From positions 186,001 through 250,000 of the IMG/VR virus record IMGVR_UViG_3300025121_000282: a stretch of DNA of 64,000 bases; one strand, written 5' to 3'. Below, one piece after another: positions 2,151 to 26,506 of the stretch. Position numbers and translations under genes: made by a program. Below the pieces are notes generated by a model. That model saw nothing but the letters and a program-made list of their open reading frames with translations, searched no databases and was not told the DNA's origin. The first letter of the stretch is position 1. Each line of letters starts with the position of its first letter.

Positions 2151-2176
2151 GCAGTAATGGCTGCGGGCGGGGATGA
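2151..2176. repeat. hairpin element copy 1 (GCAGTAATGGCTGCGGGCGGGGATGA)
   Basis: Near-identical to 17638-17667 and 24062-24090. Confidence 0.85.
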
Positions 2177-2318
2177 ACACCCGCTCTCGTGTAAGCGCTC
2201 GTGTGCGTGCGTGTCCGAGTGGGTGTGTTCCAACCTTTACAGACTACATTGACTGACAATTCTGACTATTGAACGGGAGAGTGTGTCCACACTTACCTGA
2301 AAGAGGGGGTATAAGTTT

Positions 2319-2570
2319 ATGGCCAAACTTTACGTAGTGTCTACCTGGGGGTTCGATAACGATTCCGTTATCGAGAAAGCCCTGGAAGAACTGAACGTGG
2401 AATTCCTGAAAGTTCCACGGAAAACGGACTGGTCCGACTTCAGAGTGAACCTCGCAGGCGAACACATTGTGGCTCTCTCCGAGAGGTTTGATGTGATGAT
2501 TCACCACGTTACAGGTGACAAAAAGATGATTTTTCTGGATATTAAGGGCAGCAGATTTAAACAGAGGTAA
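2319..2570 (+). CDS. hypothetical protein
   Basis: AGAGGGGG RBS; motif at 2249. Confidence 0.7.
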   Translation: MAKLYVVSTWGFDNDSVIEKALEELNVEFLKVPRKTDWSDFRVNLAGEHIVALSERFDVMIHHVTGDKKMIFLDIKGSRFKQR

Positions 2571-2810
2571 TTAGAACTGTTGCCAAATATTCCCAGGTGC
2601 TGCTTGGGGGAGGGGTGGCGCAGAGGTTGTCCCTTTTAGAACGAAAGTGGCATCTCCTGGAATGATGCGCACGGCATCTCCGTTTGGTGCACGTTCCAGG
2701 TGGAGAACTCTGCTATCGCTCATCTCGTATTGGTCGAAGTCTACCACATCATCTGGTATGATGGGTTCGTTGCCTTCGGGTAGATATTTGATTATAACCT
2801 GTATTTTCAT
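2571..2810 (-). CDS. hypothetical protein
   Basis: 79 aa ORF; GTATAAT about 30 nt upstream. Confidence 0.6.
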   Translation of the reverse strand: MKIQVIIKYLPEGNEPIIPDDVVDFDQYEMSDSRVLHLERAPNGDAVRIIPGDATFVLKGTTSAPPLPQAAPGNIWQQF

Positions 2811-2926
2811 GTAATAATTCTACAATTTACCAAAGCACAGATTATACGCTCTCAGAGGATTGACGATGGGTGGCGAGGGGTGAAGGACCCCAGAAGAGAG
2901 AATCAATCAACTAACTGAGATGGAGA

Positions 2927-3409
2927 ATGAAAATGTCTGGTCGTCGCCCCCGAATCGTCGCTTCTTCCCTCGCCCTTCTCGCCCTTCTCGCCCCCGCGAA
3001 CGCTGCCCCTGAGGAGCAGGGGCAGGAGCCGGTCACGGATGGCCTCCCTGGACCCATCGTGACGCCCGAGCCCGAGCCGGTCCTGGAGCCCGTCTCGCCC
3101 CCCACGGCTGCTCTGCAGCAGAAGGCCCCGGCGCCCCTCTGTCTCTGCGGATGCCTCGTGCAGACCTCCTCGGTTCGTCGCCTCTTCCGCCAGGGCCACG
3201 ACGCCCGCCTCGTGGGCTTCGTCGCTCGTGGCAAGCTGGCCGATGGCTCCGAGCCGAGCCCCGAGCAGACCGCAGCGGCGAACCAGATCCGGAGTGCCAA
3301 GGCTTGGACCGCCGCCCGCCGTCTCCCGCCGGTCCTGGAGGCCGCGACCCAGGAGGAAATCTCGGCCACGGAGCAGGCGGGAGAGGCCACTGCTTCCAAC
3401 GTGGGCTGA
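2927..3409 (+). CDS. family A (CLCGC...RQGHDARLVG putative metal-binding protein), copy 1, signal-peptide-like N-terminus
   Basis: Clear paralogy with 18505..18975 and 26000..26506; promoter motif at 2860. Confidence 0.85.
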   Translation: MKMSGRRPRIVASSLALLALLAPANAAPEEQGQEPVTDGLPGPIVTPEPEPVLEPVSPPTAALQQKAPAPLCLCGCLVQTSSVRRLFRQGHDARLVGFVARGKLADGSEPSPEQTAAANQIRSAKAWTAARRLPPVLEAATQEEISATEQAGEATASNVG

Positions 3410-3439
3410 TTGACCTGTGTCCCCACCGGGTGAAGAATT

Positions 3440-3555
3440 GCAAGACCCGGCTGGAAGTCCTAACTGCAGCGGCCCCTCCCTGTTCATCCTCCCTGTTCAC
3501 AGTGAGGCCCAACATGGACCATCCAATGCTTCGGGGATTCTCAGTCGGGTCTTGT
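3440..3555 (+). ncRNA. candidate sRNA with tandem anti-SD-like CCUCCCUGUUCA seeds
   Basis: Between motifs at 3410 and 3566, no ORF; 14-bp closing stem 3440-3453/3542-3555 with two G-U pairs. Confidence 0.65.
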
Positions 3556-3636
3556 TGTATCTGGGTTGACCCGGTTTGTTTCCATGTGAAGAATTATAAG
3601 GAGGAACTATAAAATGGCCCCAGTTCACCCTGCGAT

Positions 3637-3915
3637 CCAGTACCTCAAAGACTTGAGGCTCTGAGTTGGACTTCACCCGTGCCTCGGTGTGGGTTGACCC
3701 CGACTACTGTCCGCCGAATGATGACAAGACCTTCCGGGTGGACCTCCCCAACAAAGACGTGTTTGTCATCGTTTACCTGCCCGGTGCTGTAGGCCTGAAC
3801 GGCTCGGAAGTGGGCGGGGAATACGGAGATTACGAGGAGTTCGAAAAATGAGCCTCCCCCACAACGACCCCCAAGTTCTCGGCTATTACCACCAGTACCT
3901 CAAAGACTTGAGGCT
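3637..3915 (+). repeat. 24-bp exact direct repeat CCAGTACCTCAAAGACTTGAGGCT (3637-3660, 3892-3915)
   Basis: Read directly; encodes QYLKDLRL in a 16-codon stub (3614-3664) and in ORF 3848. Confidence 0.9.
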
Positions 3916-4090
3916 GGTTCTGGGTGACCTTGAGTTTTCTCCCAACCTTAACGTGGAGAAAATCATCTGGAAGGGTGCGGAAATCGCAGCCTTGGCGGGG
4001 TACAGCGGGGCATCCAACGATGGTGGTGGTTGGAAACACGTTCTGGAGGGGACCCTGAACTTGTTGTACCGGAGATCAATCGTGGGTTGA
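3848..4090 (+). CDS. hypothetical protein
   Basis: Stop is the TGA of a TTGAC half-motif at 4087. Confidence 0.7.
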   Translation: MSLPHNDPQVLGYYHQYLKDLRLVLGDLEFSPNLNVEKIIWKGAEIAALAGYSGASNDGGGWKHVLEGTLNLLYRRSIVG

Positions 4091-4126
4091 CCACAATCCA
4101 CCAGATAACAAATAGGGGTTTTAGTC

Positions 4127-4381: not shown

Positions 4382-4440
4382 CCACAACACTCTCCAGACG
4401 AAGAGTACCAGACAGAAACCATTATAGGGAGTATTTCAAC

Positions 4441-4650: not shown

Positions 4651-4678
4651 TTACAACACCATTCAGGAGGACTCTAAA

Positions 4679-4960: not shown

Positions 4961-5014
4961 CTGTAGTCCGTTTCCATGTGAAAACCAAAGAATCCTAACA
5001 GGGGGACTAAGACA

Positions 5015-5248: not shown

Positions 5249-5297
5249 GGCAACCCTGGATTGACCGGGACCGAGACAAGACGAAGAATCCCAGAGA

Positions 5298-5385
5298 GCG
5301 AGAGTGGCGAAAAACAGGAAGACGCCCTAGCTTCAGGTGCTAGGGGCTGCAAGGCACTCAGGTTCGAATCCTGACTCTCGTACCA
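5298..5385 (+). tRNA. trnL: tRNA-Leu (CAG)
   Basis: Acceptor GCGAGAG/CTCTCGT+ACCA, anticodon arm CTAGC-TTCAGGT-GCTAG, long variable arm, T arm TCAGG-TTCGAAT-CCTGA; own motif at 5261. Confidence 0.93.
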
Positions 5386-5707: not shown

Positions 5708-5751
5708 CTATAATATGTCTCCATGTGAAGAGTCTCATAAGGAGAAACCAA

Positions 5752-6140: not shown

Positions 6141-6455
6141 ATGGTTATCAAACCTGGGACCAAATCCACTACCTTGGGAACGGGTTTGACTTTCAAGGTC
6201 CGAGACCACCGTGGGACATACGGATTTCCCGGCGACCAGTGTGGGTTTGTGTTCAGGTATGACTACCCTGTCCCCGATACTTCCAGGATGGAAGTCTACA
6301 CAATTCAGGCTGATATCGATCGGGATTGGCATGTGAGTTACACTTCCTGGGTTGGACCCAAAGAAGTTATTTGCGGACCCCATAATGAGTCCTACTGGTC
6401 CACAAACGAAGCGGCTGCCCAAGCCCTTGAGTGGTATTTGAAGAGTAGAGGTTGA
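6141..6455 (+). CDS. family C hypothetical (TTLG...FPGDQ...GPKE), paralog of 10975..11286
   Basis: Alignable end to end; stop inside TTGAC at 6452. Confidence 0.85.
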   Translation: MVIKPGTKSTTLGTGLTFKVRDHRGTYGFPGDQCGFVFRYDYPVPDTSRMEVYTIQADIDRDWHVSYTSWVGPKEVICGPHNESYWSTNEAAAQALEWYLKSRG

Positions 6456-7509: not shown

Positions 7510-7815
7510 ATGGCTGACCGATTCATCAACAATGGTTGTCATGCGTGGTTTAGCTATAAGCAGGCAGAGGTGGCTGGGTATCGGGTCCATCAACGACCGG
7601 ATGGGACGACTTATCAGGTGACTACAATCAGTGACACCACAGACCACGGGTGTGGTTGGGATGACATGAAGTACCTCGGTGTCATCGGTCCGGATGATAC
7701 CTCTCTGGGCCAGTACGAGGCCACGGACCCCCTGCAGGCTATGCTCAATCGAGCCGCTGACGAGGCATGGAACGATGCCGCCCTCAACTACTACGAAGAA
7801 ATGGGGTGGGATTGA
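7510..7815 (+). CDS. family B hypothetical (HAWFS...RPDGTTY...HGCGWDDM), copy 1
   Basis: Paralogs at 13446 and 16245; stop inside TTGAC at 7812. Confidence 0.85.
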   Translation: MADRFINNGCHAWFSYKQAEVAGYRVHQRPDGTTYQVTTISDTTDHGCGWDDMKYLGVIGPDDTSLGQYEATDPLQAMLNRAADEAWNDAALNYYEEMGWD

Positions 7816-10974: not shown

Positions 10975-11286
10975 ATGGACATCAGCGACACAGACAATAA
11001 CACCACCCTGGGAACGTCGTTGACTTTCCTCATTCTGGACTACCGCGGGAAATACGACTTTCCTGGCGACCAAAACGGGTTTGTGTTCGAACATCGGAGG
11101 TCCATACCCAAGACCACCAGTACCGAGGGCTATGCCATCCGGACAGATGACACTGGTGGGGGGTGGCGGGTGGACTACATCCCCCAATTCGGTCCCAAAG
11201 AGACTGTCTACGGACCCAACCGGGAAAGCTACTGGCCCACCAACGAGGAAGCGGCTGCAGCCCTGGAGTTGTACCTGAAAGATTGA
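10975..11286 (+). CDS. family C hypothetical, copy 2
   Basis: Paralog of 6141..6455; stop inside TTGAC at 11283. Confidence 0.85.
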   Translation: MDISDTDNNTTLGTSLTFLILDYRGKYDFPGDQNGFVFEHRRSIPKTTSTEGYAIRTDDTGGGWRVDYIPQFGPKETVYGPNRESYWPTNEEAAAALELYLKD

Positions 11287-13445: not shown

Positions 13446-13724
13446 ATGGGAACTACCAGCGCGGGCCGCCATGCGTGGTACAGCCAGTCTCAAGCATGGG
13501 TGGCTGGTCATGTTACCTACCAGAGACCTGATGGGACGACCTATCAGGTGACTACAATCTCCAGCAGGCCCGAGCACGGGTGCGGTTGGGATGATATGAG
13601 GTACCTCGGTGTCATTGGTGAATCCGACATCTGCATCGGAAGCACCGAAGCACTTAACCCAAAACAAGCCAAGTTGGACAAAATCAATGATTTTGTCCGG
13701 TACAAAGAGTGGGAAATGGAATGA
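13446..13724 (+). CDS. family B hypothetical, copy 2
   Basis: Paralogy; TTAAC motif at 13388. Confidence 0.85.
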   Translation: MGTTSAGRHAWYSQSQAWVAGHVTYQRPDGTTYQVTTISSRPEHGCGWDDMRYLGVIGESDICIGSTEALNPKQAKLDKINDFVRYKEWEME

Positions 13725-16244: not shown

Positions 16245-16568
16245 ATGAGCAAGCAATTCAGCAGTGGTATGCACGCGTGGTTCAGCTGGAAACAGGCCGA
16301 AGCTGCTGGCGTTCGGACGCTGAAGCGTCCTGATGGGACAACCTACCATCTGACCACAGTGACTGCCGCACTCGAACACGGCTGTGGTTGGGATGACATG
16401 CAATATCTCGGGACCATTGGTGAAGATGACACCGACGTGTGCTCTACCATGTCCTCACGAGAAAACTGCAACCATGTGAAAAACACGACACTTCTCCCGT
16501 TGGATGTGGGTTCCAAAGAGTTCTTTAAACTGGTTCTGGACTGCGAGTCCAACCAGAAAAACAAGTAA
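16245..16568 (+). CDS. family B hypothetical, copy 3
   Basis: Paralogy; motif at 16185. Confidence 0.85.
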   Translation: MSKQFSSGMHAWFSWKQAEAAGVRTLKRPDGTTYHLTTVTAALEHGCGWDDMQYLGTIGEDDTDVCSTMSSRENCNHVKNTTLLPLDVGSKEFFKLVLDCESNQKNK

Positions 16569-16623: not shown

Positions 16624-16935
16624 ATGGCCGACCTTCGACGTGAATTTACCACTGACCAGTACGAAGCCATGCGCCCAGATTTGGAAGAAGCAAGGGCTGC
16701 AGTTCTGGCTGCGCTTGCCCGACACCATGAACTGGGTCTGACCCAATGGGTCCGTCAAGATGCTGACTCTGTACCTGACCCTGCGGTAAAAGAGGCATTC
16801 AGCCTGTTGAATCAAGCGGCCAGACTCATCGACCGGGCTCAGTTCGAACTAGTGCTGCGCCTCCATACAACCGGAGCCATTGCACCCAAAAATGGCCCGA
16901 CAAGAGAGGCAACAAATGGCAACCATTCCCCGTGA
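16624..16935 (+). CDS. family D helical protein, copy 1
   Basis: Tandem paralog of 16916..17203 (LARHHELG...DPAVKEAF). Confidence 0.8.
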   Translation: MADLRREFTTDQYEAMRPDLEEARAAVLAALARHHELGLTQWVRQDADSVPDPAVKEAFSLLNQAARLIDRAQFELVLRLHTTGAIAPKNGPTREATNGNHSP

Positions 16936-17203
16936 TTTCACCATTGCACAATACGACGCCATGGCCCCCGACTTCGAGGCCGCTCGTGCAGGCGTTCTCG
17001 CCCTATTGGCTCGCCACCATGAACTTGGTCAGAGTCATTGGTTGGGCGGTGATAGTGACTCTGCACCCAACCCCGCGGTCAAAGAAGCATTTGACCTGTT
17101 GCATCAAGCGGTAAGGCTCATGGACCGTGCTCAGCACGAACTGGTCATGCACCTCTGCGCAAACGGGCACATTCCTTTTCAAACCGATCAGAAACCGGAT
17201 TGA
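16916..17203 (+). CDS. family D helical protein, copy 2
   Basis: Tandem paralog; stop inside TTGAC at 17200. Confidence 0.8.
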   Translation: MATIPRDFTIAQYDAMAPDFEAARAGVLALLARHHELGQSHWLGGDSDSAPNPAVKEAFDLLHQAVRLMDRAQHELVMHLCANGHIPFQTDQKPD

Positions 17204-17461: not shown

Positions 17462-17503
17462 ACAGCGCCCTCCCGGCCTCGCAAGTGGTTGAGAGGGCGC
17501 TGT
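17462..17503. terminator. 11-bp hairpin ACAGCGCCCTC/GAGGGCGCTGT, possible terminator
   Basis: Inverted repeat seen directly; weak U-tract. Confidence 0.4.
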
Positions 17504-17616
17504 CGTATTTGAAATCTATGAACAAATAAATTAACCAATCCTTTCGTGGGGTGAAGAACTGTACACAGTGGGCTCGGTGCCACACCCGAACCTTCTTTCC
17601 ACGACTGATGCACCTA

Positions 17617-17667
17617 CCCCCCCCCCCCCCCCCCCCCGCAATAATGGCTGCGGGCGAGGATAGATGT
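17617..17667. repeat. C21 tract plus hairpin element copy 2
   Basis: C21 at 17617-17637, then GCAATAATGGCTGCGGGCGAGGATAGATGT. Confidence 0.85.
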
Positions 17668-18504
17668 ACCCGAATTCGCCCGTTGCGGTCCGCCTGTCAC
17701 CAGTACGTGGCATAGCTGCCCCCTCCCATCTGTACTCCCACGTGAATGCGGCTCGCACTCGCAACCGCCTATCAAACCCACACACCACTCAATTGCGCGC
17801 CCGCATCAAGTACCCACAATTTCGCAAACAGCATACACGAACACGGATGTACACGGAATCGTGTATGCTGTGCTTTCGTGTATGCCAGAACGGATGTACT
17901 GCATCACGCTCTCGCCAACACATGCAAGTGCTCACGTGAACGTACGGGCTGTCACATGTGGGCCCACACACGAGTGTGCTCAGTGTTCAAGAAAATTTGT
18001 CCACAATATCTCGTTCTGATTTCTGAAATTTGTCCGCACTGTTCCCACTCTCCCAAGACAACCACCCCAGCTTTGGAAGCCCCTCAGTTTAGAACTATTC
18101 ACCCCCTGACACCCCTCGAACCAAAGCTATTTACACGTCCACACCTAGAAACTTTCAACTTCTGGTGTGTTTATTTATACCTATGGTTCTAAAAAGCGGT
18201 CTATTATAACAAGGTGTCACCCTTTGGCCAAACCAGAGCCACAGGTTTGGGCCTGCCTTGGGTTTGGGGCTTGGGGGGGGGGAGTTGTTTTTCACCCAGT
18301 AGGGAGTGCTAGATAACCCGTATTTCGGGAGTCTCAAACCGTTGACTACCCATTGACGGAGCCCTGTAGGGGTGAAATAACTCAGAGACGGAGATTTTCT
18401 TTCCCGCCTCGAAGAGACTCCCCCCCCCCGACTAAGGATTGACGAGGCGGGATGGGGAGTGAAGAATCCCAGAGACAATCAACCGACTGAACAGGAGATT
18501 CCCA

Positions 18505-18975
18505 ATGACCACCAAGTCCACCAAGTCCACCACCAAGTCCCCCCGCGCTCCCAAGATCGTCGTCGAGAAGCTGGACGCCCTGGGCTTCCCGATTCCCGCC
18601 GCTGCGCAGGAGCCGGTCATCGTCCCGGTCGAAGAGACCAATCCGGGCGCGACCGGGGTCGCGCCCGTCGTCGTCGTCAAGGCGGTCCGAGTCGTCCCCG
18701 AGGCCCCGCTCTGCCTCTGCGGGTGCCTGACCCAGACCAGCCACCACACCCGGACCTTCCGCCAGGGCCACGACGCCCGGCTGGTGGGGATGTTCCGCAA
18801 GGCGCCCGAGGGCCTCTCGGAGGCGCAGGTCGCGGCGGCCACCCAGATCATCAACCGGAAGCTCCAGAGCGCCGCCGCGAAGCTCCCGGCCGCCTCCAAG
18901 CCCATCCTGGAGGCCGCTCCTGCAGAGCAGAACGAGACCACCAGCGACGAGGCCGCTGCTTCCAACGTGGGCTGA
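18505..18975 (+). CDS. family A (CLCGC...GHDAR) protein, copy 2
   Basis: Paralogy; motif at 18439; AGGAG RBS. Confidence 0.88.
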   Translation: MTTKSTKSTTKSPRAPKIVVEKLDALGFPIPAAAQEPVIVPVEETNPGATGVAPVVVVKAVRVVPEAPLCLCGCLTQTSHHTRTFRQGHDARLVGMFRKAPEGLSEAQVAAATQIINRKLQSAAAKLPAASKPILEAAPAEQNETTSDEAAASNVG

Positions 18976-18982
18976 TCGGCCT

Positions 18983-19007
18983 TTCGCCTCCCGGACGGAG
19001 CGGTCAA
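18983..19007 (-). promoter_or_regulatory. antisense promoter motif TTGAC-N15-GCGAA pointing into 18505..18975
   Basis: Exact motif on the - strand just after the stop codon. Confidence 0.65.
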
Positions 19008-19066
19008 TCTTTGGGTGTCCGAGCCCGGGATTGACCGCCCAAGGACCGAGGTGAATCATCCCGAGA

Positions 19067-19231
19067 TTGGCTGTTCAGAAATCGGTTCGAAACATTGAGG
19101 ATTGGCAACCACCCGGTACGTTCCGGGAAAGGGGTCAATCTTTAGGAGGTGGTTTGTCAGGACCACCAACCCAGCACATAGGCTGACACCTTTTGTGATT
19201 GGGTGCTTCGGACCGGTTTCTGAACAGCCAA
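19067..19231 (+). ncRNA. candidate structured ncRNA 1 (25-bp closing helix, multibranch core)
   Basis: 19067-19091 pairs with 19207-19231, its only non-Watson-Crick pairs being two G-U; own motif at 19031; no ORF. Confidence 0.7.
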
Positions 19232-19269
19232 ATGAGGATTGACCGCTCTGGTCTCCGAGGCGAAGAGTT

Positions 19270-19340
19270 ATGTGGGGGTACCAATCGGCCCTAGAGGCCG
19301 GGGTCCACTGATACGTAATTCAGTATTGGTACCCCCACAT
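19270..19340 (+). ncRNA. candidate ncRNA 2 (three-way junction)
   Basis: Perfect 16-bp stem 19270-19285/19325-19340 enclosing CGGCC/GGCCG and ACTGA/TCAGT hairpins; motif at 19239. Confidence 0.65.
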
Positions 19341-19378
19341 TGTCAATTGACGAGAGTCACCCTCAGGTGAAGTGTCCT

Positions 19379-19553
19379 GGAAGAGAGGACAATCCAAGCC
19401 CCCGAGCCGTGTGGCCCGCCCGACTCCGCGGTAAGGCCTGCCACCCGCTTTGGGACTCAAGGGGCCTCTCTTCCCTTTTCAACTACACCCTCATTGGTCC
19501 TTTTCAAGAGACTGGTGGGGGCGCAGTCGTATTTGGGGTTCGAAAAGGACCAA
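19379..19553 (+). ncRNA. candidate ncRNA 3 (two stem domains)
   Basis: 10-bp stem 19379-19388/19465-19474 and 12-bp stem 19494-19505/19542-19553; motif at 19347. Confidence 0.6.
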
Positions 19554-19609
19554 AACCTGGATTGACCGATTTTGTTTCCATGCGAAGAAAGACAAGGAGG
19601 AACTCAAAA

Positions 19610-19843
19610 ATGTCCAGATTCAAACCCTCGGTTTCGCAGCTGATGGAGGTCCAGCACCGGGTGGACACTCAGAATCCGTCGCAAGTGGCACTCTTCTGCC
19701 GGGTGATTGGTGCCTCGATGCTTGCCAATGCTGCTGCCTCGATTCCCTCCGTCTGGAGAGCGGCTCGGGCCCAGTTGGCCATTGAGGCCGCCACGCTCAA
19801 TGTGGTCTTGGGCATCGACCTCGAAGTGGTTTGGTGCGATTGA
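19610..19843 (+). CDS. hypothetical protein
   Basis: AAGGAGG RBS; stop inside TTGAC at 19840. Confidence 0.8.
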   Translation: MSRFKPSVSQLMEVQHRVDTQNPSQVALFCRVIGASMLANAAASIPSVWRAARAQLAIEAATLNVVLGIDLEVVWCD

Positions 19844-19900
19844 CTGATTTCGTTTCCATGTGAAGAACGACACACAATCGACAGGGAGGGGCTAAAAAAG

Positions 19901-20173
19901 ATGGCACGCTTCTACGTTCAGGCGAGTGAGTACGAGTTGATTGCGTCCCTGGACGTGGTTGTGGCCGACACCTACGAGGCCATCCAACACTTTAACCGGC
20001 ACTTCAAGGGACGGGTTGGCGGGTGGAAAGACGTGAAGAGTTCCACCCACATCGTGATCAACCTTGACAACCCCAAAGAGCACTGGTTGGGAACCGACTC
20101 CTTCAAGCGCATCTGCACCGGGTGGCGCGAAGGTCGAGAATACTGGTCGGGTCCACACTCAATCGAGTATTAA
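19901..20173 (+). CDS. hypothetical protein
   Basis: GGGAGG RBS; stop inside TTAAC at 20170. Confidence 0.8.
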   Translation: MARFYVQASEYELIASLDVVVADTYEAIQHFNRHFKGRVGGWKDVKSSTHIVINLDNPKEHWLGTDSFKRICTGWREGREYWSGPHSIEY

Positions 20174-20236
20174 CCGGTTCCATCTTCAGCTGAAAGAGAC
20201 TACGAGACACCGAACCAACTGAAAGGGGGATTCCAA

Positions 20237-20689
20237 ATGCTCAGCGAAGACCGACTCGAAGTTCTCGACCTCTACGGCTTCGGATGGAATCGCTTCTTTC
20301 AGACGGTCCACGAGCCGGACCCGGAAGTGAAGCGGTCCATGATCGGCGATGTGCTTCTCATGTGGGAGTTCGACAAGACAGGAGCCGAGTACCACTGGTA
20401 CGACCTGTTCACACGCCTCCGCCGAGACGAGCATGCGATCATCCTGGAGCAGCTGTTGGTCTTCATCGACCAGGGGTTCGTCCTCGGACCGTTCGCAGAC
20501 GACACCATCACCATCAACCCGGAAAAGCAGGAAGAACTGATGCTTTTCGTGGGTATGTGGCCGGAGGGTTTCGAGGCACCCGAGGGTGTGGAAGTTCTTC
20601 GCCTGACGGAAGAGGCCAAGGACATTCTCGAAACAGAGGGCGGAGAAGAGTACCTCATCGAGCAGGCGGTCAAAGCACTCAAGGATTGA
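20237..20689 (+). CDS. acidic hypothetical protein
   Basis: Stop inside TTGAC at 20686. Confidence 0.8.
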   Translation: MLSEDRLEVLDLYGFGWNRFFQTVHEPDPEVKRSMIGDVLLMWEFDKTGAEYHWYDLFTRLRRDEHAIILEQLLVFIDQGFVLGPFADDTITINPEKQEELMLFVGMWPEGFEAPEGVEVLRLTEEAKDILETEGGEEYLIEQAVKALKD

Positions 20690-20759
20690 CCGGCCTCTCC
20701 TTCGGGTGAAGGAACTAAGAGAGCACTTTCGCTCTCCTTTTCCAGCCCAGGAGGTCATA

Positions 20760-21065
20760 ATGTCCCGCATCGACGCCGAATTCAAGTCCGTTGTCGCTTT
20801 CGCCAGTTACAAGCTCGACAACGACGACCCCACCTTCACGGGTGCCGATTTGCAAACCCTCAACCGGGTGACGCTGACATCGGTCCCGAACATCAAGCTC
20901 CAATTGCTCGAACTTGGCCTGACCCAGGCCATTCCCGAAAAGGCCTCCGTGGTCCGAGGGTTCACCGCGAACTCGCACGACCGGTGGGCCGGCAACCCCT
21001 GCGCGGGTGGGTCGGGTGGGTCGTCGATCCAGAAGTTCGCAGGGAATGCGGCCGGCTGGAATTGA
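20760..21065 (+). CDS. hypothetical protein
   Basis: AGGAGG RBS; stop inside TTGAC at 21062. Confidence 0.8.
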   Translation: MSRIDAEFKSVVAFASYKLDNDDPTFTGADLQTLNRVTLTSVPNIKLQLLELGLTQAIPEKASVVRGFTANSHDRWAGNPCAGGSGGSSIQKFAGNAAGWN

Positions 21066-21117
21066 CCTGAAGTCCTGTGGGGCGAAAGTCCACACACCAA
21101 ACCAGGGAGTTTTCAGT

Positions 21118-21387
21118 ATGTCGCGAGGCAACTCACAAGTCAATCGAAACTACGAATGCGCCACAAAGATGGCCGAGTGTGCTGATTTCGTGGTTGAGCA
21201 CTTGGGCTCACACGCACACTTTCAGGTGCGATGGGGGCAATTCTGGGCGACGGTCCGCCTCGACAGAAATGGGGATGTCTCGTGCGGGAGTTTCAATCGA
21301 AACTTTTCGCCTTGGGGCTCATCCGCCTCTGTTTTTTCCGAATTGCTGAGACAGTGGAAGTCCGAGGGTGAACCCAAGGCTGATTGA
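21118..21387 (+). CDS. hypothetical protein
   Basis: GGGAG RBS; stop inside TTGAC at 21384. Confidence 0.75.
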   Translation: MSRGNSQVNRNYECATKMAECADFVVEHLGSHAHFQVRWGQFWATVRLDRNGDVSCGSFNRNFSPWGSSASVFSELLRQWKSEGEPKAD

Positions 21388-21447
21388 CCCGTTTCCATTT
21401 CGGACGAAAAGACTACGAGACACCAGCCAACAAAGGAGTAGTTTCCA

Positions 21448-21726
21448 ATGTCCCCACCCTTTCTGATCGATTTTCAGGCCATGCAAGACCACCTGAACTC
21501 AAGGGAGATGGTACTCGCTGCCTGTTCCATCAATCGGGGTCAGCACGCAGGACAGCGGCTACGGCTCGTGGCGCGTTTCCTGGTGGAAGACCCCGGTGAT
21601 AAGGACACGATTTTCTACTATGTCACCCGCACGTTCCAGGGTGATAAGGTGTACGAGGATGGGCCAAGCCCACGTCTGGCTCTCTCGGTGTCGCTGTTCA
21701 ACAGCATCTCCCTGGGCGAAGGTTGA
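21448..21726 (+). CDS. hypothetical protein
   Basis: AAGGAG RBS; stop inside TTGAC at 21723. Confidence 0.8.
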   Translation: MSPPFLIDFQAMQDHLNSREMVLAACSINRGQHAGQRLRLVARFLVEDPGDKDTIFYYVTRTFQGDKVYEDGPSPRLALSVSLFNSISLGEG

Positions 21727-21777
21727 CCCGCCTCGTTTCCATGTGAAGACCAGCACACAATCAAGGAGGAAACAGTA

Positions 21778-22035
21778 ATGACTCTGGCCAACGACCCCCG
21801 CCGGTGGGGCGGGATTTGCAAGTGGGATGGAACTTCGGCTCCCACGGTGACCGTCCAACCCCGGCTCCTGGATCTCCAAGGGTACGACTCGAACGGTCAG
21901 TACTTCGGGCGCGGTCTCCCCCTCTACTGCGTCACAGACGAAGAGGGGGACATGAACTTCTTCGTTCGTGCGGAGGGCATGGACCACGCCCGAGAGTTGG
22001 TTCTGGAGCGGGTTCCCACCTGTCAGTTCGCCTAA
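21778..22035 (+). CDS. hypothetical protein (LDxxGYDxxGxYFGxG)
   Basis: AAGGAGG RBS; motif at 21723. Confidence 0.8.
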   Translation: MTLANDPRRWGGICKWDGTSAPTVTVQPRLLDLQGYDSNGQYFGRGLPLYCVTDEEGDMNFFVRAEGMDHARELVLERVPTCQFA

Positions 22036-22098
22036 GTGGGAATTGACTGAGGTCCGTTTCCACCTGAATTGTGACACACTGAGAAATGGAGACTGAAA

Positions 22099-22323
22099 GT
22101 GGCCAACGTTCCCTACAAGTTTCGTGGTCTTCCCTGCAACATCACGACCGACGACAAGCTCTGGTGCATCGTCGGTCGCTTCGTCAATGAACGGGGTTGC
22201 GGTGGGGGCGCCTTGGAGTGGTGCTACGATGAGCAGGACGCCTCGGCTGTTCTGGCTCAGATGGTTCAGGACAGCCAGTTTCGAAACCTGCAAGCCATCA
22301 CGTATAAGCAGTTCTGCGCTTAA
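22099..22323 (+). CDS. hypothetical protein
   Basis: GGAG RBS; stop inside TTAAC at 22320. Confidence 0.75.
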   Translation: MANVPYKFRGLPCNITTDDKLWCIVGRFVNERGCGGGALEWCYDEQDASAVLAQMVQDSQFRNLQAITYKQFCA

Positions 22324-22373
22324 CCCACGCCGTTTCCATGTGAACAGTCACGCACTGGAAAAGGAGACCGAAA

Positions 22374-22514
22374 ATGGTAAAGAATCTCATCATCGGTCTC
22401 CTGCTCGTTGCCTTCGTGGCACGGGCAAACCCAGAAAAGGTGGCTCATCTGAGCAAGATGGCCACGACTGGAGTCACCTACCTGGAGAAACAGGTCGGGT
22501 TCAAATTCTGGTGA
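22374..22514 (+). CDS. 46-aa membrane-anchored/secreted peptide
   Basis: AAGGAG RBS; MVKNLIIGLLLVAFVARA hydrophobic N-terminus. Confidence 0.65.
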   Translation: MVKNLIIGLLLVAFVARANPEKVAHLSKMATTGVTYLEKQVGFKFW

Positions 22515-22562
22515 ATTGACCGCACCACAATTCGGACGAAGAGTGTTGTAGGAGACACCCCC

Positions 22563-22868
22563 ATGTACAAGAGTTTGGCAGAGTTTCTAGCCTCAACGAA
22601 TTTGCTGGAGAGGTTGACCAACATCGACAGGGCCCTGAATGTAAACGGGGCCCTGTGCAACCACCATGACGGTGTGGTCTTCAAAATCAACTTCGGCCCC
22701 TATACGGCGAGTTGCATGTGGCTGGATACCGTGTCGGACAACACCTGGAATGTCCAACTCTCCTACCTGGATTCAGACCACAAATACCACCCGTTCGGTG
22801 GCAGCGTTTCAACCTCTGAGTTCAAGATCGTAAAGGGTGTAGCCGAGATCTGCGGACTCGGCAATTGA
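22563..22868 (+). CDS. hypothetical protein
   Basis: AGGAG RBS; stop inside TTGAC at 22865. Confidence 0.8.
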   Translation: MYKSLAEFLASTNLLERLTNIDRALNVNGALCNHHDGVVFKINFGPYTASCMWLDTVSDNTWNVQLSYLDSDHKYHPFGGSVSTSEFKIVKGVAEICGLGN

Positions 22869-23245
22869 CGGGGTCTTCTCCGGGTGAAGAGTCCCCGAGG
22901 CGCTTTTGCCTCCCTTGTCCTCTGGGGGTTTTAACCATGCCTTCTTCCGATCTCTCCTTTTCCTTTTCCGGCCGTCCCTACCGCGCCCGCCTTCTCTCCG
23001 AGCCCGGCAAGGGTGACGCGCTGGTCTTCGGTCTCAGCCTCAACCCGAAACTGGACAAGGTCTGGGTTCTGGTGCAACGTGACGGCGCGTGGGTGCGCCC
23101 CACGGGTGAAAAGCCCTCGGCTCTGGGGCGGGCCGCAGTCGCAGCGATCGGTTGATCGGCGTTTCCGATTGACGGGGTCTTCTCCGGGTGAAGAGTCCCC
23201 GAGGCGCTTTTGCCTCCCTTGTCCTCTGGGGGTTTTAACCATGCC
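22864..23245 (+). repeat. 78-bp exact direct repeat (22864-22941, 23168-23245) comprising promoter, leader and ATG
   Basis: Read directly base for base. Confidence 0.95.
22937..23155 (+). CDS. hypothetical protein (MPSSDLSF)
   Basis: ATG inside repeat copy 1. Confidence 0.7.
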   Translation: MPSSDLSFSFSGRPYRARLLSEPGKGDALVFGLSLNPKLDKVWVLVQRDGAWVRPTGEKPSALGRAAVAAIG

Positions 23246-23540
23246 CGCCGCTGCCGCCCTTGCCCTCGACACGTTCCAGGCCAACCACGCGAATGACGAC
23301 CTTTGGGACGTCATGACGTTTGCTGATATGGTGGAAAACTGGCACCTTTCGACCCCCGAAGAAGAGTGCTTCAAAGCGGCTCTGGAGTTGGAGGGGCTCG
23401 GCCTCCTCACCGTCAGTACCGGATTTCTGTGCTACTCGGTCGAACTGACGGGCCTTGGGCGAGAGGCCTCCCAGATCTTCCACCAGCGGTTTTTGGACCG
23501 CGTGAAGGCCCAGAACCCGGACTTCGATGGCGTATGGTAA
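23241..23540 (+). CDS. hypothetical protein (MPAAAALA)
   Basis: ATG inside repeat copy 2. Confidence 0.75.
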   Translation: MPAAAALALDTFQANHANDDLWDVMTFADMVENWHLSTPEEECFKAALELEGLGLLTVSTGFLCYSVELTGLGREASQIFHQRFLDRVKAQNPDFDGVW

Positions 23541-23592
23541 GGGATTGACTGAAATCTGTTTCCATGTGAATTGTGACAAGGAGGAACTCAAA

Positions 23593-23820
23593 ATGGAAAC
23601 AGAAATCCTGACCCAGTGGTTCAACGAGGAAAGCGGCAATCACTGGATCGTGGTGGAAGACGCCATTGGGAAGTTTCTTCACAAGGGAAAACGGGTGGCA
23701 CTGCTGGCGGTCAGCGGTGATGTGGACAACACCTTCGTACTGAAGTGGGTTGTCGACCCCTGCTGGACGACGGAAGAGGAAGAATCGGCACTGTCAGTGC
23801 TTGGAGTTGCAGCCCGCTGA
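23593..23820 (+). CDS. hypothetical protein
   Basis: GAGGA RBS; motif at 23545. Confidence 0.75.
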   Translation: METEILTQWFNEESGNHWIVVEDAIGKFLHKGKRVALLAVSGDVDNTFVLKWVVDPCWTTEEEESALSVLGVAAR

Positions 23821-23865
23821 ATCGATTCAGCGGGATTGACCGCAGTTTTTTCGTGTGAATTACAA

Positions 23866-24050
23866 TGTACCGGGGCGACCTCCGAAGGGCCACTTAGCTC
23901 TTAAACATGTGCCTACGCCCCAAAGTGCTATGCGGTAGGGTGCATGCAATAGTCGTCAATGGTGTCTGGCGTAAGTGTGCTGCGGGGTCGGGTCAATGTT
24001 CGACCGTAAGACCGTCTGAAGCACACAGACACCGTTCCTTTTAAAGCTGG
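23866..24050 (+). ncRNA. candidate structured ncRNA 4
   Basis: Motif at 23836 followed by no ORF; nested stems 23961-67/24027-33, 23975-81/24020-26, 23986-90/24001-05 and 23906-16/23935-46. Confidence 0.55.
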
Positions 24051-24051
24051 A

Positions 24052-24090
24052 CCCCCCCCCTGCAATAATGGCTGCGGGCGGGGATAGATG
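24052..24090. repeat. C9 tract plus hairpin element copy 3
   Basis: GCAATAATGGCTGCGGGCGGGATAGATGT at 24062-24090. Confidence 0.85.
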
Positions 24091-24318
24091 TGTCAAACGT
24101 GTGGACACCTGCTACGCCTGTCAACGCGTCCACGCTGCATCCGCACAACCCACTCAGACGTACCCCCACGGGAGACATTCGAGCCGCACAATCCATTGTA
24201 ACCCGTTTCCACATAATAGTAAGTTGTGGTGGGTGGCAGGTTGTCCGAGGCATTTGAAAACTCACTGTTGAATCTTCCACCTGAGATTGACCCGTTTCCA
24301 TCTCGGGTGAAAAACAAC

Positions 24319-24714
24319 ATGGAAACAACATGGACCAATGAAGACGCAGCCGAAGCAGGACGAGCCTACCAAGGAGCCAACGACCCGGATTGGCAGGCAC
24401 CTGACCTGGACTGGCGGTACGAACCTGCTTTTCCAGTTGAAAAACTCATCCCGCTGATGCCGAGTGGGTTCAACGGCTGGAATTCGTGGCTGCTGGACGA
24501 GCGGCAGTGGGACGAGTCTGGAGGTACCAGTCGATGGGGCGACGAATTCACCGAGTGGTGGAAGCAACAGTCCGAGGATGAGCCCGTGGTCCTCGTGGAA
24601 TCGCACGATGGGTCCAAAATCCTTGGGATCTGGGATGGGTGGCCCCGGTCTGCGGTTTCCATCACCTCAAGGTTGCCGACCCTACCTGCCTTTGTGGGTC
24701 GGGCCAGACAATGA
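24319..24714 (+). CDS. possible degenerate ParB/Srx-like domain protein; probably leaderless
   Basis: EPVVLVE...IWDGWPR resembles the ParB DGxHR motif with H replaced by P; ATG 8 nt after GTGAA. Confidence 0.6.
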   Translation: METTWTNEDAAEAGRAYQGANDPDWQAPDLDWRYEPAFPVEKLIPLMPSGFNGWNSWLLDERQWDESGGTSRWGDEFTEWWKQQSEDEPVVLVESHDGSKILGIWDGWPRSAVSITSRLPTLPAFVGRARQ

Positions 24715-24806
24715 TTCAGCCATAACTCCCTGGTGACAAGTTGCAATTGACCGAACTTTCGTTCAGGCGAAAGTTCTGGAGAGACAACCAACCACGAAGA
24801 TTCCAA

Positions 24807-25025
24807 ATGACCCTCCCCATCACGATTTTCGTTGTCACGACCGCCTCGTCCATTGACGAAAACACACCGAACCCGAAGGTGATGGTGGGACACCTCTCCG
24901 AAGGCGAAATCTGGAACCAGTTCACCGAGCTCCTGGGTGGGTCTGACTGCGAACTCATCCAGGAGAGCGAAACCCGCTGGACCGGCGTCGTGGGAGACCG
25001 GACGGTCTTCGCCTTCCACGCCTGA
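24807..25025 (+). CDS. hypothetical protein
   Basis: Motif at 24747. Confidence 0.7.
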   Translation: MTLPITIFVVTTASSIDENTPNPKVMVGHLSEGEIWNQFTELLGGSDCELIQESETRWTGVVGDRTVFAFHA

Positions 25026-25085
25026 ACGATTGACGGGCTTTGTTTCTGTCTGACGAACACCACACCAACAAGGGAGACTTCGAAA

Positions 25086-25304
25086 ATGACTCGCGAAACC
25101 GTCACCAAGTGCATTGCCTTCATTTACATCTGCCTTTGCACCATTGGCCTCGGCGCCATGGCGGGCCTGCAGGAGCGGCAGTTCAGCGGGGCATGGTGGG
25201 TGCTCAGTCTCCTGATGGCCGCGGTCGTGGCGGTCATGGGCCTCATGGCCACCGTCTGCGAGCGCAAGCACCTGGGTTGGCGAATCTGGGTCGAAGAGTG
25301 CTGA
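25086..25304 (+). CDS. two-TM membrane protein
   Basis: GGGAG RBS; two hydrophobic segments. Confidence 0.75.
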   Translation: MTRETVTKCIAFIYICLCTIGLGAMAGLQERQFSGAWWVLSLLMAAVVAVMGLMATVCERKHLGWRIWVEEC

Positions 25305-25364
25305 TTGACGGAGCCTCCTGAGGGGCGAAGAGTCCCAGACCAACAACCAAGAGGAGACCGCACG

Positions 25365-25709
25365 ATGCCATTCCCCACCCCCCAGATCGAAGCTGCCACT
25401 CCCACCCCCTGCTCCGCCTTTCGGGCGTGGGCTGTCTACGCCGACTTCGACGGCAATGCGCCTGACACCAAGGACCTCGTCCTTTGCGCCTCCGAACCGC
25501 TGGCGCAAGCGGCGGCAGAGTTCCTCGCGTGGGCTGCCGACGAGCAGCAGGCGAACTGTTACAATGGCGCTGACTGCGACCCTGATGCCGATGGTGTTGC
25601 CGTCCCATCGGTCGACGAAGCGAATCGCGCGAGGAATTTCGTGGTCCGCGAGACCGTGGCCTCTCGGGTCTGCACGACCTGGGACGAGGTGTTGGCCGAC
25701 CTTCGCTAA
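25365..25709 (+). CDS. hypothetical protein
   Basis: GAGGAG RBS; motif at 25305. Confidence 0.75.
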   Translation: MPFPTPQIEAATPTPCSAFRAWAVYADFDGNAPDTKDLVLCASEPLAQAAAEFLAWAADEQQANCYNGADCDPDADGVAVPSVDEANRARNFVVRETVASRVCTTWDEVLADLR

Positions 25710-25716
25710 CCTGACC

Positions 25717-25741
25717 TTCGTCCTCGACTGAGAGTCGTCAA
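25717..25741 (-). promoter_or_regulatory. antisense promoter motif TTGAC-N15-ACGAA pointing into 25365..25709
   Basis: Exact motif on the - strand just after the stop codon. Confidence 0.65.
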
Positions 25742-25999
25742 GCTGTGCCCAGTCTGCCGAGAGGTGGCCTGGGCACAGCCGTACCTGAGTTCTGAGAGAT
25801 TCGTCCTCACAGGCATCCGGCTCTTCGGGCTGATTGGCCGATTGACGGAGGGTCGCAGCGGGTGAAAAAGGATAAGAGGACGAGATAGTTTCGTTTCGGT
25901 CCTCCTGCCCCGGTCCCCCGACTAAGGATTGACGGACCCGGGGCCGAGACGAAGAATCCCAGAGACAGCGAATCAACCCAAGACGAAGGAGATCATCCC

Positions 26000-26506
26000 A
26001 TGGCCACCAAGTCCACCAAGAGCACCACCAAGTCCCCCCGCGCCACCCGCAAGCAGGCCGAGGTCCTCGACGCCCTCGGTTTCCCGGTCCCCGCCATCAT
26101 GGAGGCCGCTCCCGAGCCCGTCGTGGCGCCCGAGCCCGAAATCCCGGTGGTCGTGGCCGTCAAGGCCGAAAAGGCGGTCCGAGTCGTCCCCGAGGCCCCG
26201 CTCTGCCTCTGCGGCTGCCTCGTGCAGACGAGCAGCCACCTGCGGACCTTCCGCCAGGGCCATGACGCCCGGCTGGTGGGCTTCCTGGCCGCCAACGAGC
26301 GGGCGGTCGCGAAGCAGAAGGAGGCCCCTCACAACCTCTCGGAGGCGCAGATCACCGCCGCCTGCCAGATCCGGAACCGCAAGGCGGAGGCCGCCGCCGC
26401 GAAGCTCCCTTCGACCTCGTCGAAGCCCGTGCTGGAGGCCGCTCCTGCGGAGCAGAACGAAGCCGAGCAGAGCACGGACGAGCAGGACGCCGCGAACGCC
26501 GGCTGA
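26000..26506 (+). CDS. family A (CLCGC...GHDAR) protein, copy 3
   Basis: Paralogy; motif at 25929; AAGGAG RBS. Confidence 0.88.
   Translation: MATKSTKSTTKSPRATRKQAEVLDALGFPVPAIMEAAPEPVVAPEPEIPVVVAVKAEKAVRVVPEAPLCLCGCLVQTSSHLRTFRQGHDARLVGFLAANERAVAKQKEAPHNLSEAQITAACQIRNRKAEAAAAKLPSTSSKPVLEAAPAEQNEAEQSTDEQDAANAG

What the first reader, a model, noticed from the sequence alone, without database searches (positions are those of the whole stretch)
2151..26506. Three-fold macro-module: hairpin element, strong promoter and CxCGC-GHD gene
The 26-30 nt element GCARTAATGGCTGCGGGCG(A/G)GGATRGA occurs at 2151, 17638 and 24062 and I found it nowhere else. Each copy lies 0.8-1.9 kb upstream of one family A gene (2927, 18505, 26000), whose promoters share the flank (A)CT(A/C)A(G)AGGATTGACG. 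Each family A gene heads a new run of cassettes, and copies 1 and 2 are followed directly by ncRNA cassettes. Inference: the early region is built from three units, each with a cis element and a lead gene, perhaps marking DNA-entry stages, replication or recombination initiation sites, or an ancient triplication.
Basis: partly seen in the sequence, partly recalled or inferred. Interest (0 to 1): 0.75.

Follow-up and report, generated by a model that had tools for sequence, protein, structure and literature searches.

The report
Conserved hairpin repeat in jumbo phage
A 23-27-base hairpin-forming sequence occurs exactly three times in a 315-kb groundwater phage. It is kept almost unchanged in related phages while its surroundings drift, so it is a real signal under selection, but its link to the neighbouring gene family is inherited rather than obligatory and its function is unproven.

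Summary
The element occurs at window 2151, 17638 and 24062, all on the + strand, and nowhere else in the 314,886-bp phage genome. Each copy lies 776, 867 or 1,938 nt upstream of a paralogous CxCGC...GHD gene.

Two related phages (about 72-80% nt identity) keep copies 1 and 2 at syntenic sites. The invariant core is GCARTARTGGCTGCGGGCGRGGA, set in flanks that barely align. It is not coding, matches no Rfam family and is not a CRISPR repeat.

All six copies can form a hairpin (GCA/UGC stem, 8-nt loop). In copies 2 and 3 a C-rich 5' arm (C21, C9; CCCCGCCC in one relative) pairs with the G-rich 3' arm.

The link to family A is not obligatory:
- A fourth family A gene in the same genome has no element.
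- One relative keeps copy 2, its roughly 850-nt non-coding region and the tandem promoters, but has an unrelated gene in place of A2.
- No other genes repeat in register.

So the "macro-module" reduces to an old triplication of element plus family A gene.

My best reading (confidence 0.4) is a cis-acting hairpin in non-coding leader transcripts, read by one trans-acting factor. A DNA-level site (0.3) is not excluded. DNA-entry or replication roles have no support so far.

The parts
2151..2177 (+). Element copy 1 (E1): GCAGTAATGGCTGCGGGCGGGGATGAA. It lies in the 220-nt divergent intergenic region between a minus-strand 218-aa gene (1440-2096) and the + promoter at 2249. It has no C-rich 5' arm.
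   Evidence: The orthologue in L022 matches 26 of 28 positions and is the longest conserved block of the intergenic region. Hairpin -9.2 kcal/mol.
17617..17664 (+). C21 tract (17617-17637) plus element copy 2 (E2, 17638-17664). It lies about 75 nt downstream of the promoter motif at 17531-17556.
   Evidence: Orthologues exist in L162/L164/L166 (C10 arm) and L165 (CCCCGCCC arm, perfect 12-bp stem, -28.1 kcal/mol, z -4.8). Logan unitigs of all 4 runs break at 17607-17647.
24052..24088 (+). C9-T arm (24052-24061) plus element copy 3 (E3, 24062-24088). It lies about 195 nt downstream of the promoter motif at 23836-23860, inside a roughly 420-nt ORF-free cassette (23866-24286).
   Evidence: It is 95% identical to copy 2 over 40 nt, while the rest of the two cassettes do not align. 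Hairpin -18.2 kcal/mol, z -2.3.
17691..17701 (+). Second conserved block CGCCTGTCACC, starting exactly 33 nt after the GGA of copy 2.
   Evidence: The same block at the same spacing is seen in copy 3 and in the copy 2 orthologues of L162 and L165, with unconserved sequence in between.
24115..24125 (+). Second conserved block CGCCTGTCAAC, starting 33 nt after the GGA of copy 3.
17565..18352 (+). ORF-free region of about 790 nt after copy 2. It is syntenic with islands of conservation in relative R2. It holds two direct repeats AAATTTGTCC(A/G)CA (17993-18005, 18026-18038), a candidate conserved hairpin at about 17975-18040, a G10 tract (18273-18282), and a sigma-70-consensus promoter on the minus strand (18231-18203).
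18353..18467 (+). Tandem promoter motifs (18353-18377 and 18439-18467), with a C10 tract (18420-18429) between them, ahead of A2. The block is duplicated ahead of A3 and conserved in L162, where it drives a gene that is not family A.
25842..25957 (+). Tandem promoter motifs ahead of A3 (25842-25867 and 25929-25957).
   Evidence: the orthologue is in L027
2860..2885 (+). Promoter motif ahead of A1.
2927..3409 (+). Family A gene A1 (160 aa), carrying CxCGC...FRQGHDARLVG. Its N-terminus looks like a signal peptide.
   Evidence: orthologue P0006 in L022
18505..18975 (+). Family A gene A2 (156 aa).
   Evidence: the 3' part of an orthologue is in L167; the gene is replaced by a 101-aa gene in L162
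26000..26506 (+). Family A gene A3 (168 aa).
   Evidence: orthologue P0003 in L027. AF2 model: mean pLDDT 78; residues ~61-130 above 90, two helices (88-104, 115-135) after the Cys cluster.

Best explanation
What the element is. The 27-mer is the conserved core of a stem-loop module: 23 nt, GCARTARTGGCTGCGGGCGRGGA, with 20 invariant positions over six copies. An inner stem GCA/UGC closes an 8-nt conserved loop (A-R-U-A-R-U-G-G-C region). The G-rich 3' arm GGGCGRGG pairs, in copies 2 and 3 and their orthologues, with a C-rich 5' arm.

How it most likely works. I read it as a cis-acting signal on the sense strand of ORF-free, promoter-headed transcripts of the phage's promoter-dense accessory ('early') region. 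One trans-acting factor, most likely a protein, would recognise it sequence-specifically as an RNA hairpin. The purpose would be control of processing, stability or read-through of these leader or non-coding transcripts.

What is shown:
- The copy number, and selection on the primary sequence.
- The capacity of every copy to form the hairpin.
- Its position in ORF-free sequence, and its non-coding nature.
- An old triplication together with the family A gene.

What is inferred:
- That the TTGAC...GTGAA motifs are promoters.
- That the element acts as RNA.
- That a common factor reads all copies, and what the outcome of that is.

The arrangement with family A is explained by an ancient segmental triplication. 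It does not reflect a required functional pairing.
For: - Copy number. Exactly three copies exist in 315 kb, with none degenerate and none on the other strand.
- Selection between paralogues. Copies 2 and 3 are 95% identical over 40 nt while the rest of their cassettes is unalignable, and their linked genes are only about 61% identical.
- Selection between orthologues. Copy 1 keeps 26 of 28 positions in a roughly 72%-identical relative, where the remaining intergenic sequence is largely diverged. Copy 2 is kept in two relatives.
- Concerted change. Position 7 is A in all three window copies and G in all three copies from relatives. This is expected if one factor reads all copies, or if the copies undergo gene conversion.
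- Not coding. The internal ATG becomes GTG in relatives, and downstream reading frames differ.
- Hairpin. All six copies fold to the same inner hairpin. The outer stem is a perfect 12 bp in L165 (-28.1 kcal/mol, z -4.8), where a G in the 5' arm sits exactly opposite the C of GGGCGGGG.
- Sense-strand context. Copy 2 is about 75 nt and copy 3 about 195 nt downstream of promoter motifs. In the relatives copy 2 follows about 20 nt after a + strand gene.
- Second block. CGCCTGTCA(C/A)C lies at a fixed 33-nt spacing in copies 2 and 3 and in the copy 2 orthologues.
- No antisense partner of 11 nt or more beyond chance.
Against: - Copy 1 and its orthologue have no conserved sense-strand promoter upstream. 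They lie in a divergent intergenic region 55 nt from the start of a minus-strand gene.
- The inner stem never varies, so there is no covariation. RNAalifold over four copies gives only -8.4 kcal/mol, with no pair changed on both sides.
- Single-sequence fold z-scores around copies 2 and 3 are about 0.
- The alignment-fold z of the long non-coding region is -3.8 to -4.5, but neighbouring coding controls reach -3.6.
- The wobble and mismatch pattern of the outer stem favours the + strand in copy 3 and the - strand in copy 2.
- No RNA run holds the phage.
- Strict primary-sequence conservation fits a DNA site equally well.
Confidence: 0.4

Rival explanations
1. DNA-level site. The element is an asymmetric double-stranded (or extruded-hairpin) DNA site bound or cut by a phage or host protein. 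Possible roles are a replication or priming site, a localized single-strand nick site as in T5 or phiKMV-type phages, or an anchor for a DNA-organising protein. This rival covers the first reader's 'replication or recombination initiation' idea.
For: - There is strict primary-sequence conservation without covariation.
- Copy 1 lies in a divergent, probably untranscribed-in-sense intergenic region.
- All copies lie on one strand.
- The region after copy 2 has origin-like furniture: two conserved direct repeats containing TTGTCCACA or TTGTCCGCA, an A+T-richer stretch, and a consensus sigma-70 promoter facing the element on the minus strand.
- Three of the six exact TTGTCCACA in the genome lie within 360 nt of the three elements.
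- Independent assemblies break or have gaps at all three sites: L019, L020, the N-run in L024, and the unitigs.
Against: - Contig depth shows no step at copy 2.
- The breaks are explained by homopolymers at copies 2 and 3, and other contigs (L015, L021) cross copies 1 and 3 intact.
- The 7-mer enrichment is weak, and the motif is absent from the copy 1 orthologue region in L022.
- There is no dyad or iterated structure inside the element.
- Three origins within 22 kb would be unusual.
- No raw reads were available to look for nicks.
Confidence: 0.3
2. Family A binding site. The element is the binding site of the family A proteins themselves (Cys-cluster domain plus a basic Ser/Thr/Lys-rich N-terminus). 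Each unit would then be a site-plus-binder pair, comparable to parS/ParB or nut/N.
For: - Each of the three elements lies within 2 kb upstream of a family A gene in the same orientation. The chance of this for independent placement in the 66-kb region is about 2e-4 by my own estimate from the coordinates.
- A2 and A3 have a basic, probably disordered N-terminus. The AF2 model gives a confident small core with an invariant C-x-C-G-C...G-H-D.
- Relative R1 keeps both the element and the gene in units 1 and 2.
Against: - Block duplication explains the proximity without any functional link.
- The fourth family A gene has no element.
- Relative R2 keeps copy 2 with a non-family-A gene in place of A2.
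- The three sites are nearly identical while the three proteins have diverged to 47-61% identity.
- No fold or family assigns nucleic-acid binding to the protein.
- The complex prediction was not run by the tool.
Confidence: 0.1
3. CRISPR decoy. The element is a solitary CRISPR-repeat-like decoy (an RNA anti-CRISPR), transcribed from the phage promoters to sequester Cas proteins of the host.
For: - It is a promoter-headed, ORF-free cassette with a G+C-rich hairpin.
- By my own recollection of that repeat, not a tool result, the sequence after the stem (CGGGGAUAGA) resembles the 3' end of type I-E repeats (GCGGGGAUAAACCG).
- The position of copies 2 and 3 fits.
Against: - A scan of 185,579 species genomes with RTGGCTGCGGGCGRGGATR gave only single chance matches with no flank similarity and no arrays. 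The viral and metagenome scans gave the same result.
- The 14-nt inner hairpin is far larger than a repeat loop.
- Copy 1 lacks the 5' arm.
Confidence: 0.07
4. No function. The three copies are a leftover of the triplication, kept alike by gene conversion.
For: - The concerted A/G state at position 7 is what gene conversion would give.
- Recombination between family A paralogues does occur (L021).
Against: - Conversion tracts of only 23-40 nt, with unalignable flanks on both sides, at three loci and in three lineages, are unlikely.
- The orthologous conservation of copies 1 and 2 against diverged intergenic sequence indicates purifying selection.
Confidence: 0.05

Closest known systems
Lambdoid nut (boxA/boxB) and HK022 put sites: cis-acting RNA elements in early transcripts
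   Same: There are a few copies per genome. They are short hairpin-containing elements on the sense strand downstream of early promoters and ahead of gene runs, are conserved as sequence, and in lambda sit next to the gene of a small basic protein.
   Different: The element has no boxA or boxB consensus and an 8-nt loop instead of a GNRA-like pentaloop. Copy 1 has no upstream sense promoter. Almost every gene here has its own promoter motif. No N-like protein or terminator read-through has been shown.
Phage N4 early promoters (three DNA-hairpin promoters read by the injected virion RNA polymerase)
   Same: There are three copies, they form hairpins, and they lie in a region of small early-type genes in one orientation.
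   Different: N4 hairpins have 5-7-bp stems and 3-nt loops. No phage RNA polymerase was detected here, although that search was inconclusive. Copies 2 and 3 lie inside units headed by another promoter motif.
Localized single-strand interruption sites of T5 and phiKMV-like phages
   Same: They are a handful of long asymmetric motifs, all on one strand of a phage genome.
   Different: No evidence of nicks could be obtained here. Those motifs are not hairpins with C- and G-rich arms.
RNA anti-CRISPRs (solitary repeat units)
   Same: They are a short structured repeat in promoter-headed, ORF-free phage cassettes.
   Different: No matching CRISPR array was found in any collection scanned, and the architecture does not fit a repeat.
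PHROG families phrog_5390 and phrog_5395 (for the family A gene)
   Same: The family A core matches both families at E 4.5e-8 to 1e-4. They are small phage proteins with the C-x-C-G-C...G-H-D signature.
   Different: Both families have unknown function, so membership explains nothing about mechanism.

Membership tests
nut/put-type antitermination RNA | Lies in the sense transcript shortly downstream of an early promoter | tested here: inconclusive
   Copy 2 is about 75 nt and copy 3 about 195 nt after TTGAC...GTGAA motifs. Copy 1 and its orthologue have no conserved upstream sense promoter. The promoter role of the motif is itself inferred.
nut/put-type antitermination RNA | boxA consensus plus a boxB hairpin (5-bp stem, pentaloop), or the two-stem put fold | tested here: not met
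   The hairpin is GCA-N8-UGC with G- and C-rich outer arms. No boxA-like block is present. No Rfam family matches, even at E up to 10.
nut/put-type antitermination RNA | Confers read-through of downstream terminators, with or without an N-like protein | not testable with these tools
   No RNA run holds this phage.
N4-type hairpin promoters | 5-7-bp stem with a 3-nt loop on the template strand | tested here: not met
   The loop is 8 nt and the stem is 4-12 bp.
N4-type hairpin promoters | A virion-packaged single-subunit RNA polymerase is encoded | tested here: inconclusive
   PF00940 found nothing in the genome, but the control genomes did not ring either. The PHROG scan of 8 of the largest ORFs found a terminase, an exonuclease V-type helicase/nuclease, a DnaB-like helicase and endonuclease (LAGLIDADG, HNH) hits, but no polymerase.
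CRISPR repeat / RNA anti-CRISPR | Near-identity to the repeat of a CRISPR array in cellular genomes | tested here: not met
   More than 120 genome contigs matched the 19-nt pattern once each, with unrelated flanks and no arrays. The test is limited to exact matches of that pattern.
Any Rfam RNA family | Covariance-model score at the gathering threshold | tested here: not met
   There were 0 matches in the window at gathering thresholds. Only chance-level hits (E 0.3-9) were found in the three 3-kb loci.
Localized nick sites (T5 / phiKMV type) | A strand break at a fixed position of the motif in virion DNA | not testable with these tools
   Only assembled unitigs were available. These show breaks at the C21 tract but no depth step.
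phrog_5390 / phrog_5395 (family A protein) | Profile match over the Cys-cluster/GHD core | tested here: met
   A3 matches phrog_5395 at 4.5e-8 and A1 matches phrog_5390 at 6.5e-7. C-x-C-G-C and G-H-D are invariant in 50 homologues. No Pfam family matches.

The most novel reading that the evidence does not exclude
The hairpin would be the shared 5' module of a lineage-specific set of phage non-coding RNAs, one of which is about 800 nt long and conserved in islands between phages. One dedicated phage or host factor would read it. This would make it a new kind of RNA-based control or decoy system in the accessory region of a jumbo phage.
Probability: 0.15. Interest if true: 0.7.

Novelty: new variant of a known kind. 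Interest (0 to 1): 0.45.

Why it matters
Jumbo-phage accessory regions are mostly unannotated small genes, and almost nothing is known about their cis-acting signals.

This case offers a short element with exact copy number, clear purifying selection, a defined hairpin and orthologues in related phages. It sits next to a long, partly conserved non-coding region. That makes it a concrete handle for experiments on how such a region is transcribed, processed or replicated.

It also shows that proximity of repeats in a duplicated block does not prove a functional pairing. The apparent 'module' breaks apart once relatives are examined.

Tried and rejected
- Small ORF. Rejected: the ATG becomes GTG in relatives, and downstream similarity is at nucleotide level with frame shifts.
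- Antisense or sRNA target. No complementary stretch of 11 nt or more beyond chance exists in the genome.
- CRISPR repeat. Only single chance hits were found.
- Known RNA family. None matches.
- Sigma-70 or sigma-54 promoter inside the element. By eye, the -10-like A(A/G)TA(A/G)T is not matched by a conserved -35. The scan flagged only copy 3.
- Phage RNA polymerase or sigma factor that could read the element. Nothing was found.
- DnaA-box cluster. Three of six exact TTGTCCACA lie near the elements, but the enrichment is weak and the motif is absent from L022. I kept this only as a lead.
- Terminal repeat or physical genome end. There is no depth step.
- Close relatives in public collections. 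The phage collection and IMG/VR hold none. Relatives were reached only through protein look-ups.
- L016 is a chance match in an A+T-rich contig that looks eukaryotic.
- L024 seemed to lack copy 1, but the gap is a run of N.
- Family A function from fold. There is no PDB or AlphaFold DB match, and the Atlas neighbours are unnamed phage proteins.
- The literature search for the motif returned nothing useful.
- The protein-DNA complex prediction was not folded by the tool and counts as no evidence.
- Conserved structure of the long non-coding region. The z-score is no better than that of the best coding control.

Full report
**What the window is.** The window is bases 186,001-250,000 of a 314,886-bp phage record from groundwater metagenomes. 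The first 28 kb are G+C-richer (52-59%) than the rest (42-48%). They are packed with small + strand genes, almost each preceded by the motif gATTGACn-N14-16-(G/T)TGAA(G/A). This motif occurs about 50 times in window 1-29000 and is concentrated between genome 150 and 216 kb. I take these motifs as promoters because of their fixed position 25-45 nt ahead of ribosome-binding sites. That is an inference. The second box is not a standard -10 hexamer, and no phage RNA polymerase or sigma factor was found.

**The observation.** The 27-mer is at 2151, 17638 and 24062, all on the + strand, with none expected by chance.
- The whole genome holds exactly these three copies, and there are no degenerate copies on either strand.
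- The family A genes are true paralogues with an invariant Cys-cluster/GHD core. They lie 776, 867 and 1,938 nt downstream of the three copies.
- A fourth, more divergent family A gene at genome 139879-140482 has an A1-like promoter tail but no element.
- The "shared promoter flank" is largely the generic promoter consensus. What is truly shared is a tandem-promoter block ahead of A2 and A3.

**Is it specific to this phage lineage?** Yes.
- Exact-pattern scans of viral, metagenome and genome collections returned only the phage itself, near-identical contigs from other samples, and chance hits without flank similarity. No hit was in an array.
- The public phage collection and IMG/VR hold no close relative.

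**Relatives.** Protein look-ups reached two related lineages at about 72-80% nucleotide identity.
- R1 (L022/L023, L165, L167, L027) has copy 1 at the syntenic divergent intergenic site, 772 nt upstream of an A1 orthologue. It also has copy 2, the 3' part of an A2 orthologue and an A3 orthologue with the tandem promoters. The triplication therefore predates the split of these phages.
- R2 (L162, L164, L166) has copy 2 about 20 nt after the stop of a 125-aa gene. It is followed by a syntenic non-coding region of about 850 nt and by the tandem promoters. These promoters drive an unrelated 101-aa gene, not family A.
- Together with the element-less fourth gene, this shows that element and family A gene are not obligatorily coupled.
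- Self-comparison of the early region at protein level finds other small paralogue families, but none repeated in register with the three units. The "macro-module" is therefore just element plus family A gene.

**Selection.** Over six copies the core is GCARTARTGGCTGCGGGCGRGGA, with 20 of 23 positions invariant.
- Copy 1 against its orthologue keeps 26 of 28 positions and is the longest conserved block in an otherwise diverged intergenic region.
- Copies 2 and 3 share 38 of 40 nt, including the C-tract, while nothing else in their cassettes aligns.
- Position 7 is A in all three window copies and G in all three copies from relatives. This concerted state is expected if one factor reads all copies, or if the copies exchange sequence.
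- A second block, CGCCTGTCA(C/A)C, follows at exactly 33 nt in copies 2 and 3 and in the copy 2 orthologues, with unconserved sequence in between.
- The element is not coding.

**Structure.** Every copy folds to the same inner hairpin.

| Copy | Source | Energy (kcal/mol) | z-score |
|---|---|---|---|
| 1 | window | -9.2 | -1.5 |
| 1 orthologue | L022 | -9.7 | -0.8 |
| 2 | window | -13.5 | -1.6 |
| 2 orthologue | L162 | -20.4 | -1.9 |
| 2 orthologue | L165 | -28.1 | -4.8 |
| 3 | window | -18.2 | -2.3 |

- Where a C-rich 5' arm is present, the stem lengthens.
- In L165 the arm reads CCCCGCCC and is perfectly complementary to GGGCGGGG. The homopolymers C21, C10 and C9 therefore look like slipped versions of a pairing arm.
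- Homopolymers of 9 or more bases are rare. There are seven in the genome, five of them between window 17617 and 26608.
- There is no covariation in the inner stem, because it never varies. A four-sequence consensus fold is weak.

**The long region after copy 2.** It shows conserved islands, two conserved direct repeats and a candidate hairpin with one fully compensated and five wobble-compensated pairs. However, its alignment-fold z-score (-3.8 to -4.5) is no better than the best of six neighbouring coding controls, which range from -1.0 to -3.6. Conserved RNA structure there remains unproven.

**DNA-level clues.** These are weak overall.
- Unitigs of four runs all break at 17607-17647, two contigs of another sample start at the C-tracts of copies 2 and 3, and one scaffold has an N-run over copy 1.
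- Against that, depth is flat, other contigs cross copies 1 and 3, and homopolymers explain the breaks.
- A consensus sigma-70 promoter on the minus strand points at copy 2 from 560 nt away.
- Exact TTGTCCACA sits within 360 nt of each element, accounting for 3 of 6 copies in the genome. The wider enrichment is weak and the motif is missing from the copy 1 orthologue region.

**Family A.**
- It has no Pfam family. It matches two PHROGs of unknown function.
- 49 cluster representatives in 1.8 billion proteins share only the core.
- The AF2 model is confident over residues ~61-130 (10-residue pLDDT blocks 95-97), with helices at 88-104 and 115-135, but has no fold match.
- Its role, and any binding to the element, remain open. 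The complex prediction was not run by the tool.

**Verdict.** The element is real, lineage-specific, triplicated long ago with the family A gene, and under strong selection as a sequence that can form a hairpin.
- My best reading is an RNA-level cis signal read by one factor (0.4).
- A DNA-level site is the main rival (0.3).

Noticed in passing
L021 (7,582 nt; JGI sample 3300009031), against window 18425-26560: This contig of the same phage population differs by only about 5 SNPs. It runs from window 23184 to 26445 and then continues at 18925 to 23240. The crossover lies in the last roughly 50-80 nt of the family A gene (A3 5' part, A2 3' part), and the contig ends overlap by 57 nt. It could be a tandem duplication, an excised 7.5-kb circle or an assembly cycle between the two paralogues.
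   Followed up: partly
window 22864-22941 and 23168-23245: Two identical 78-nt units lie 304 nt apart. Each has a promoter motif followed by a hairpin and TTTT, so each looks like a gene for an sRNA of about 45 nt. Run X9 holds a variant with one 304-nt unit missing.
   Followed up: partly
window 17565-18352 and L162:11320-12020: This ORF-free region of about 800 nt is syntenic between phages. It has conserved islands, two direct repeats AAATTGTCCGCAC spaced 33-37 nt apart, G- and C-tracts that can pair over long range, and a consensus sigma-70 promoter on the minus strand (18231-18203). It could be a large non-coding RNA or an origin-like region.
   Followed up: partly
window 3410-3565, 19031-19346, 19347-19558: These stretches are headed by promoter motifs, contain no ORF, and lie directly after A1 and A2. 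They do not resemble each other.
   Followed up: no
window 5258-5385: tRNA-Leu (CAG) at 5298-5385 sits directly behind one of the phage promoter motifs. Its tail GAAGAATCCCAGAGA is the same as in the A2 and A3 promoters.
   Followed up: no
genome 139400-140482 (outside the window): This is the fourth family A gene (201 aa, with a different N-terminal half). It lies behind an A+T-rich, GTAC-rich ORF-free stretch and has no element.
   Followed up: partly
window 2927-3020: The A1 N-terminus (MKMSGRRPRIVASSLALLALLAPANA) looks like a signal peptide. The homologous stretch of A2 and A3 is basic and hydrophilic.
   Followed up: no
window 17463-17515, 25745-25790; L162:12560-12615; L027:380-430: Terminator-like hairpins in this phage group are followed by a recurring tail (G)YCGTATTTG rather than a plain T-run.
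   Followed up: no
window about 28000: G+C drops sharply from about 58% to about 45% where the promoter-dense small-gene region ends. The high-G+C part may have a different origin from the rest of the genome.
   Followed up: no
window 6141-6455 / 10975-11286; 7510-7815 / 13446-13724 / 16245-16568; 16624-16935 / 16916-17203: Three further small paralogue families are scattered in the same region, one of them also in three copies. They are not in register with the element units.
   Followed up: partly
L162-L170, last 30 nt of each contig: Contigs of five samples of the relatives all end inside the same promoter motif (GATTGACCGATTGCAGTTCCATGTGAAAAC). Repeated promoter sequence therefore limits assembly of this region.
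   Followed up: no
window 33709-46785: This stretch holds host-like genes: an M16 peptidase pair, an adenylosuccinate lyase and a GroEL-type chaperonin.
   Followed up: no
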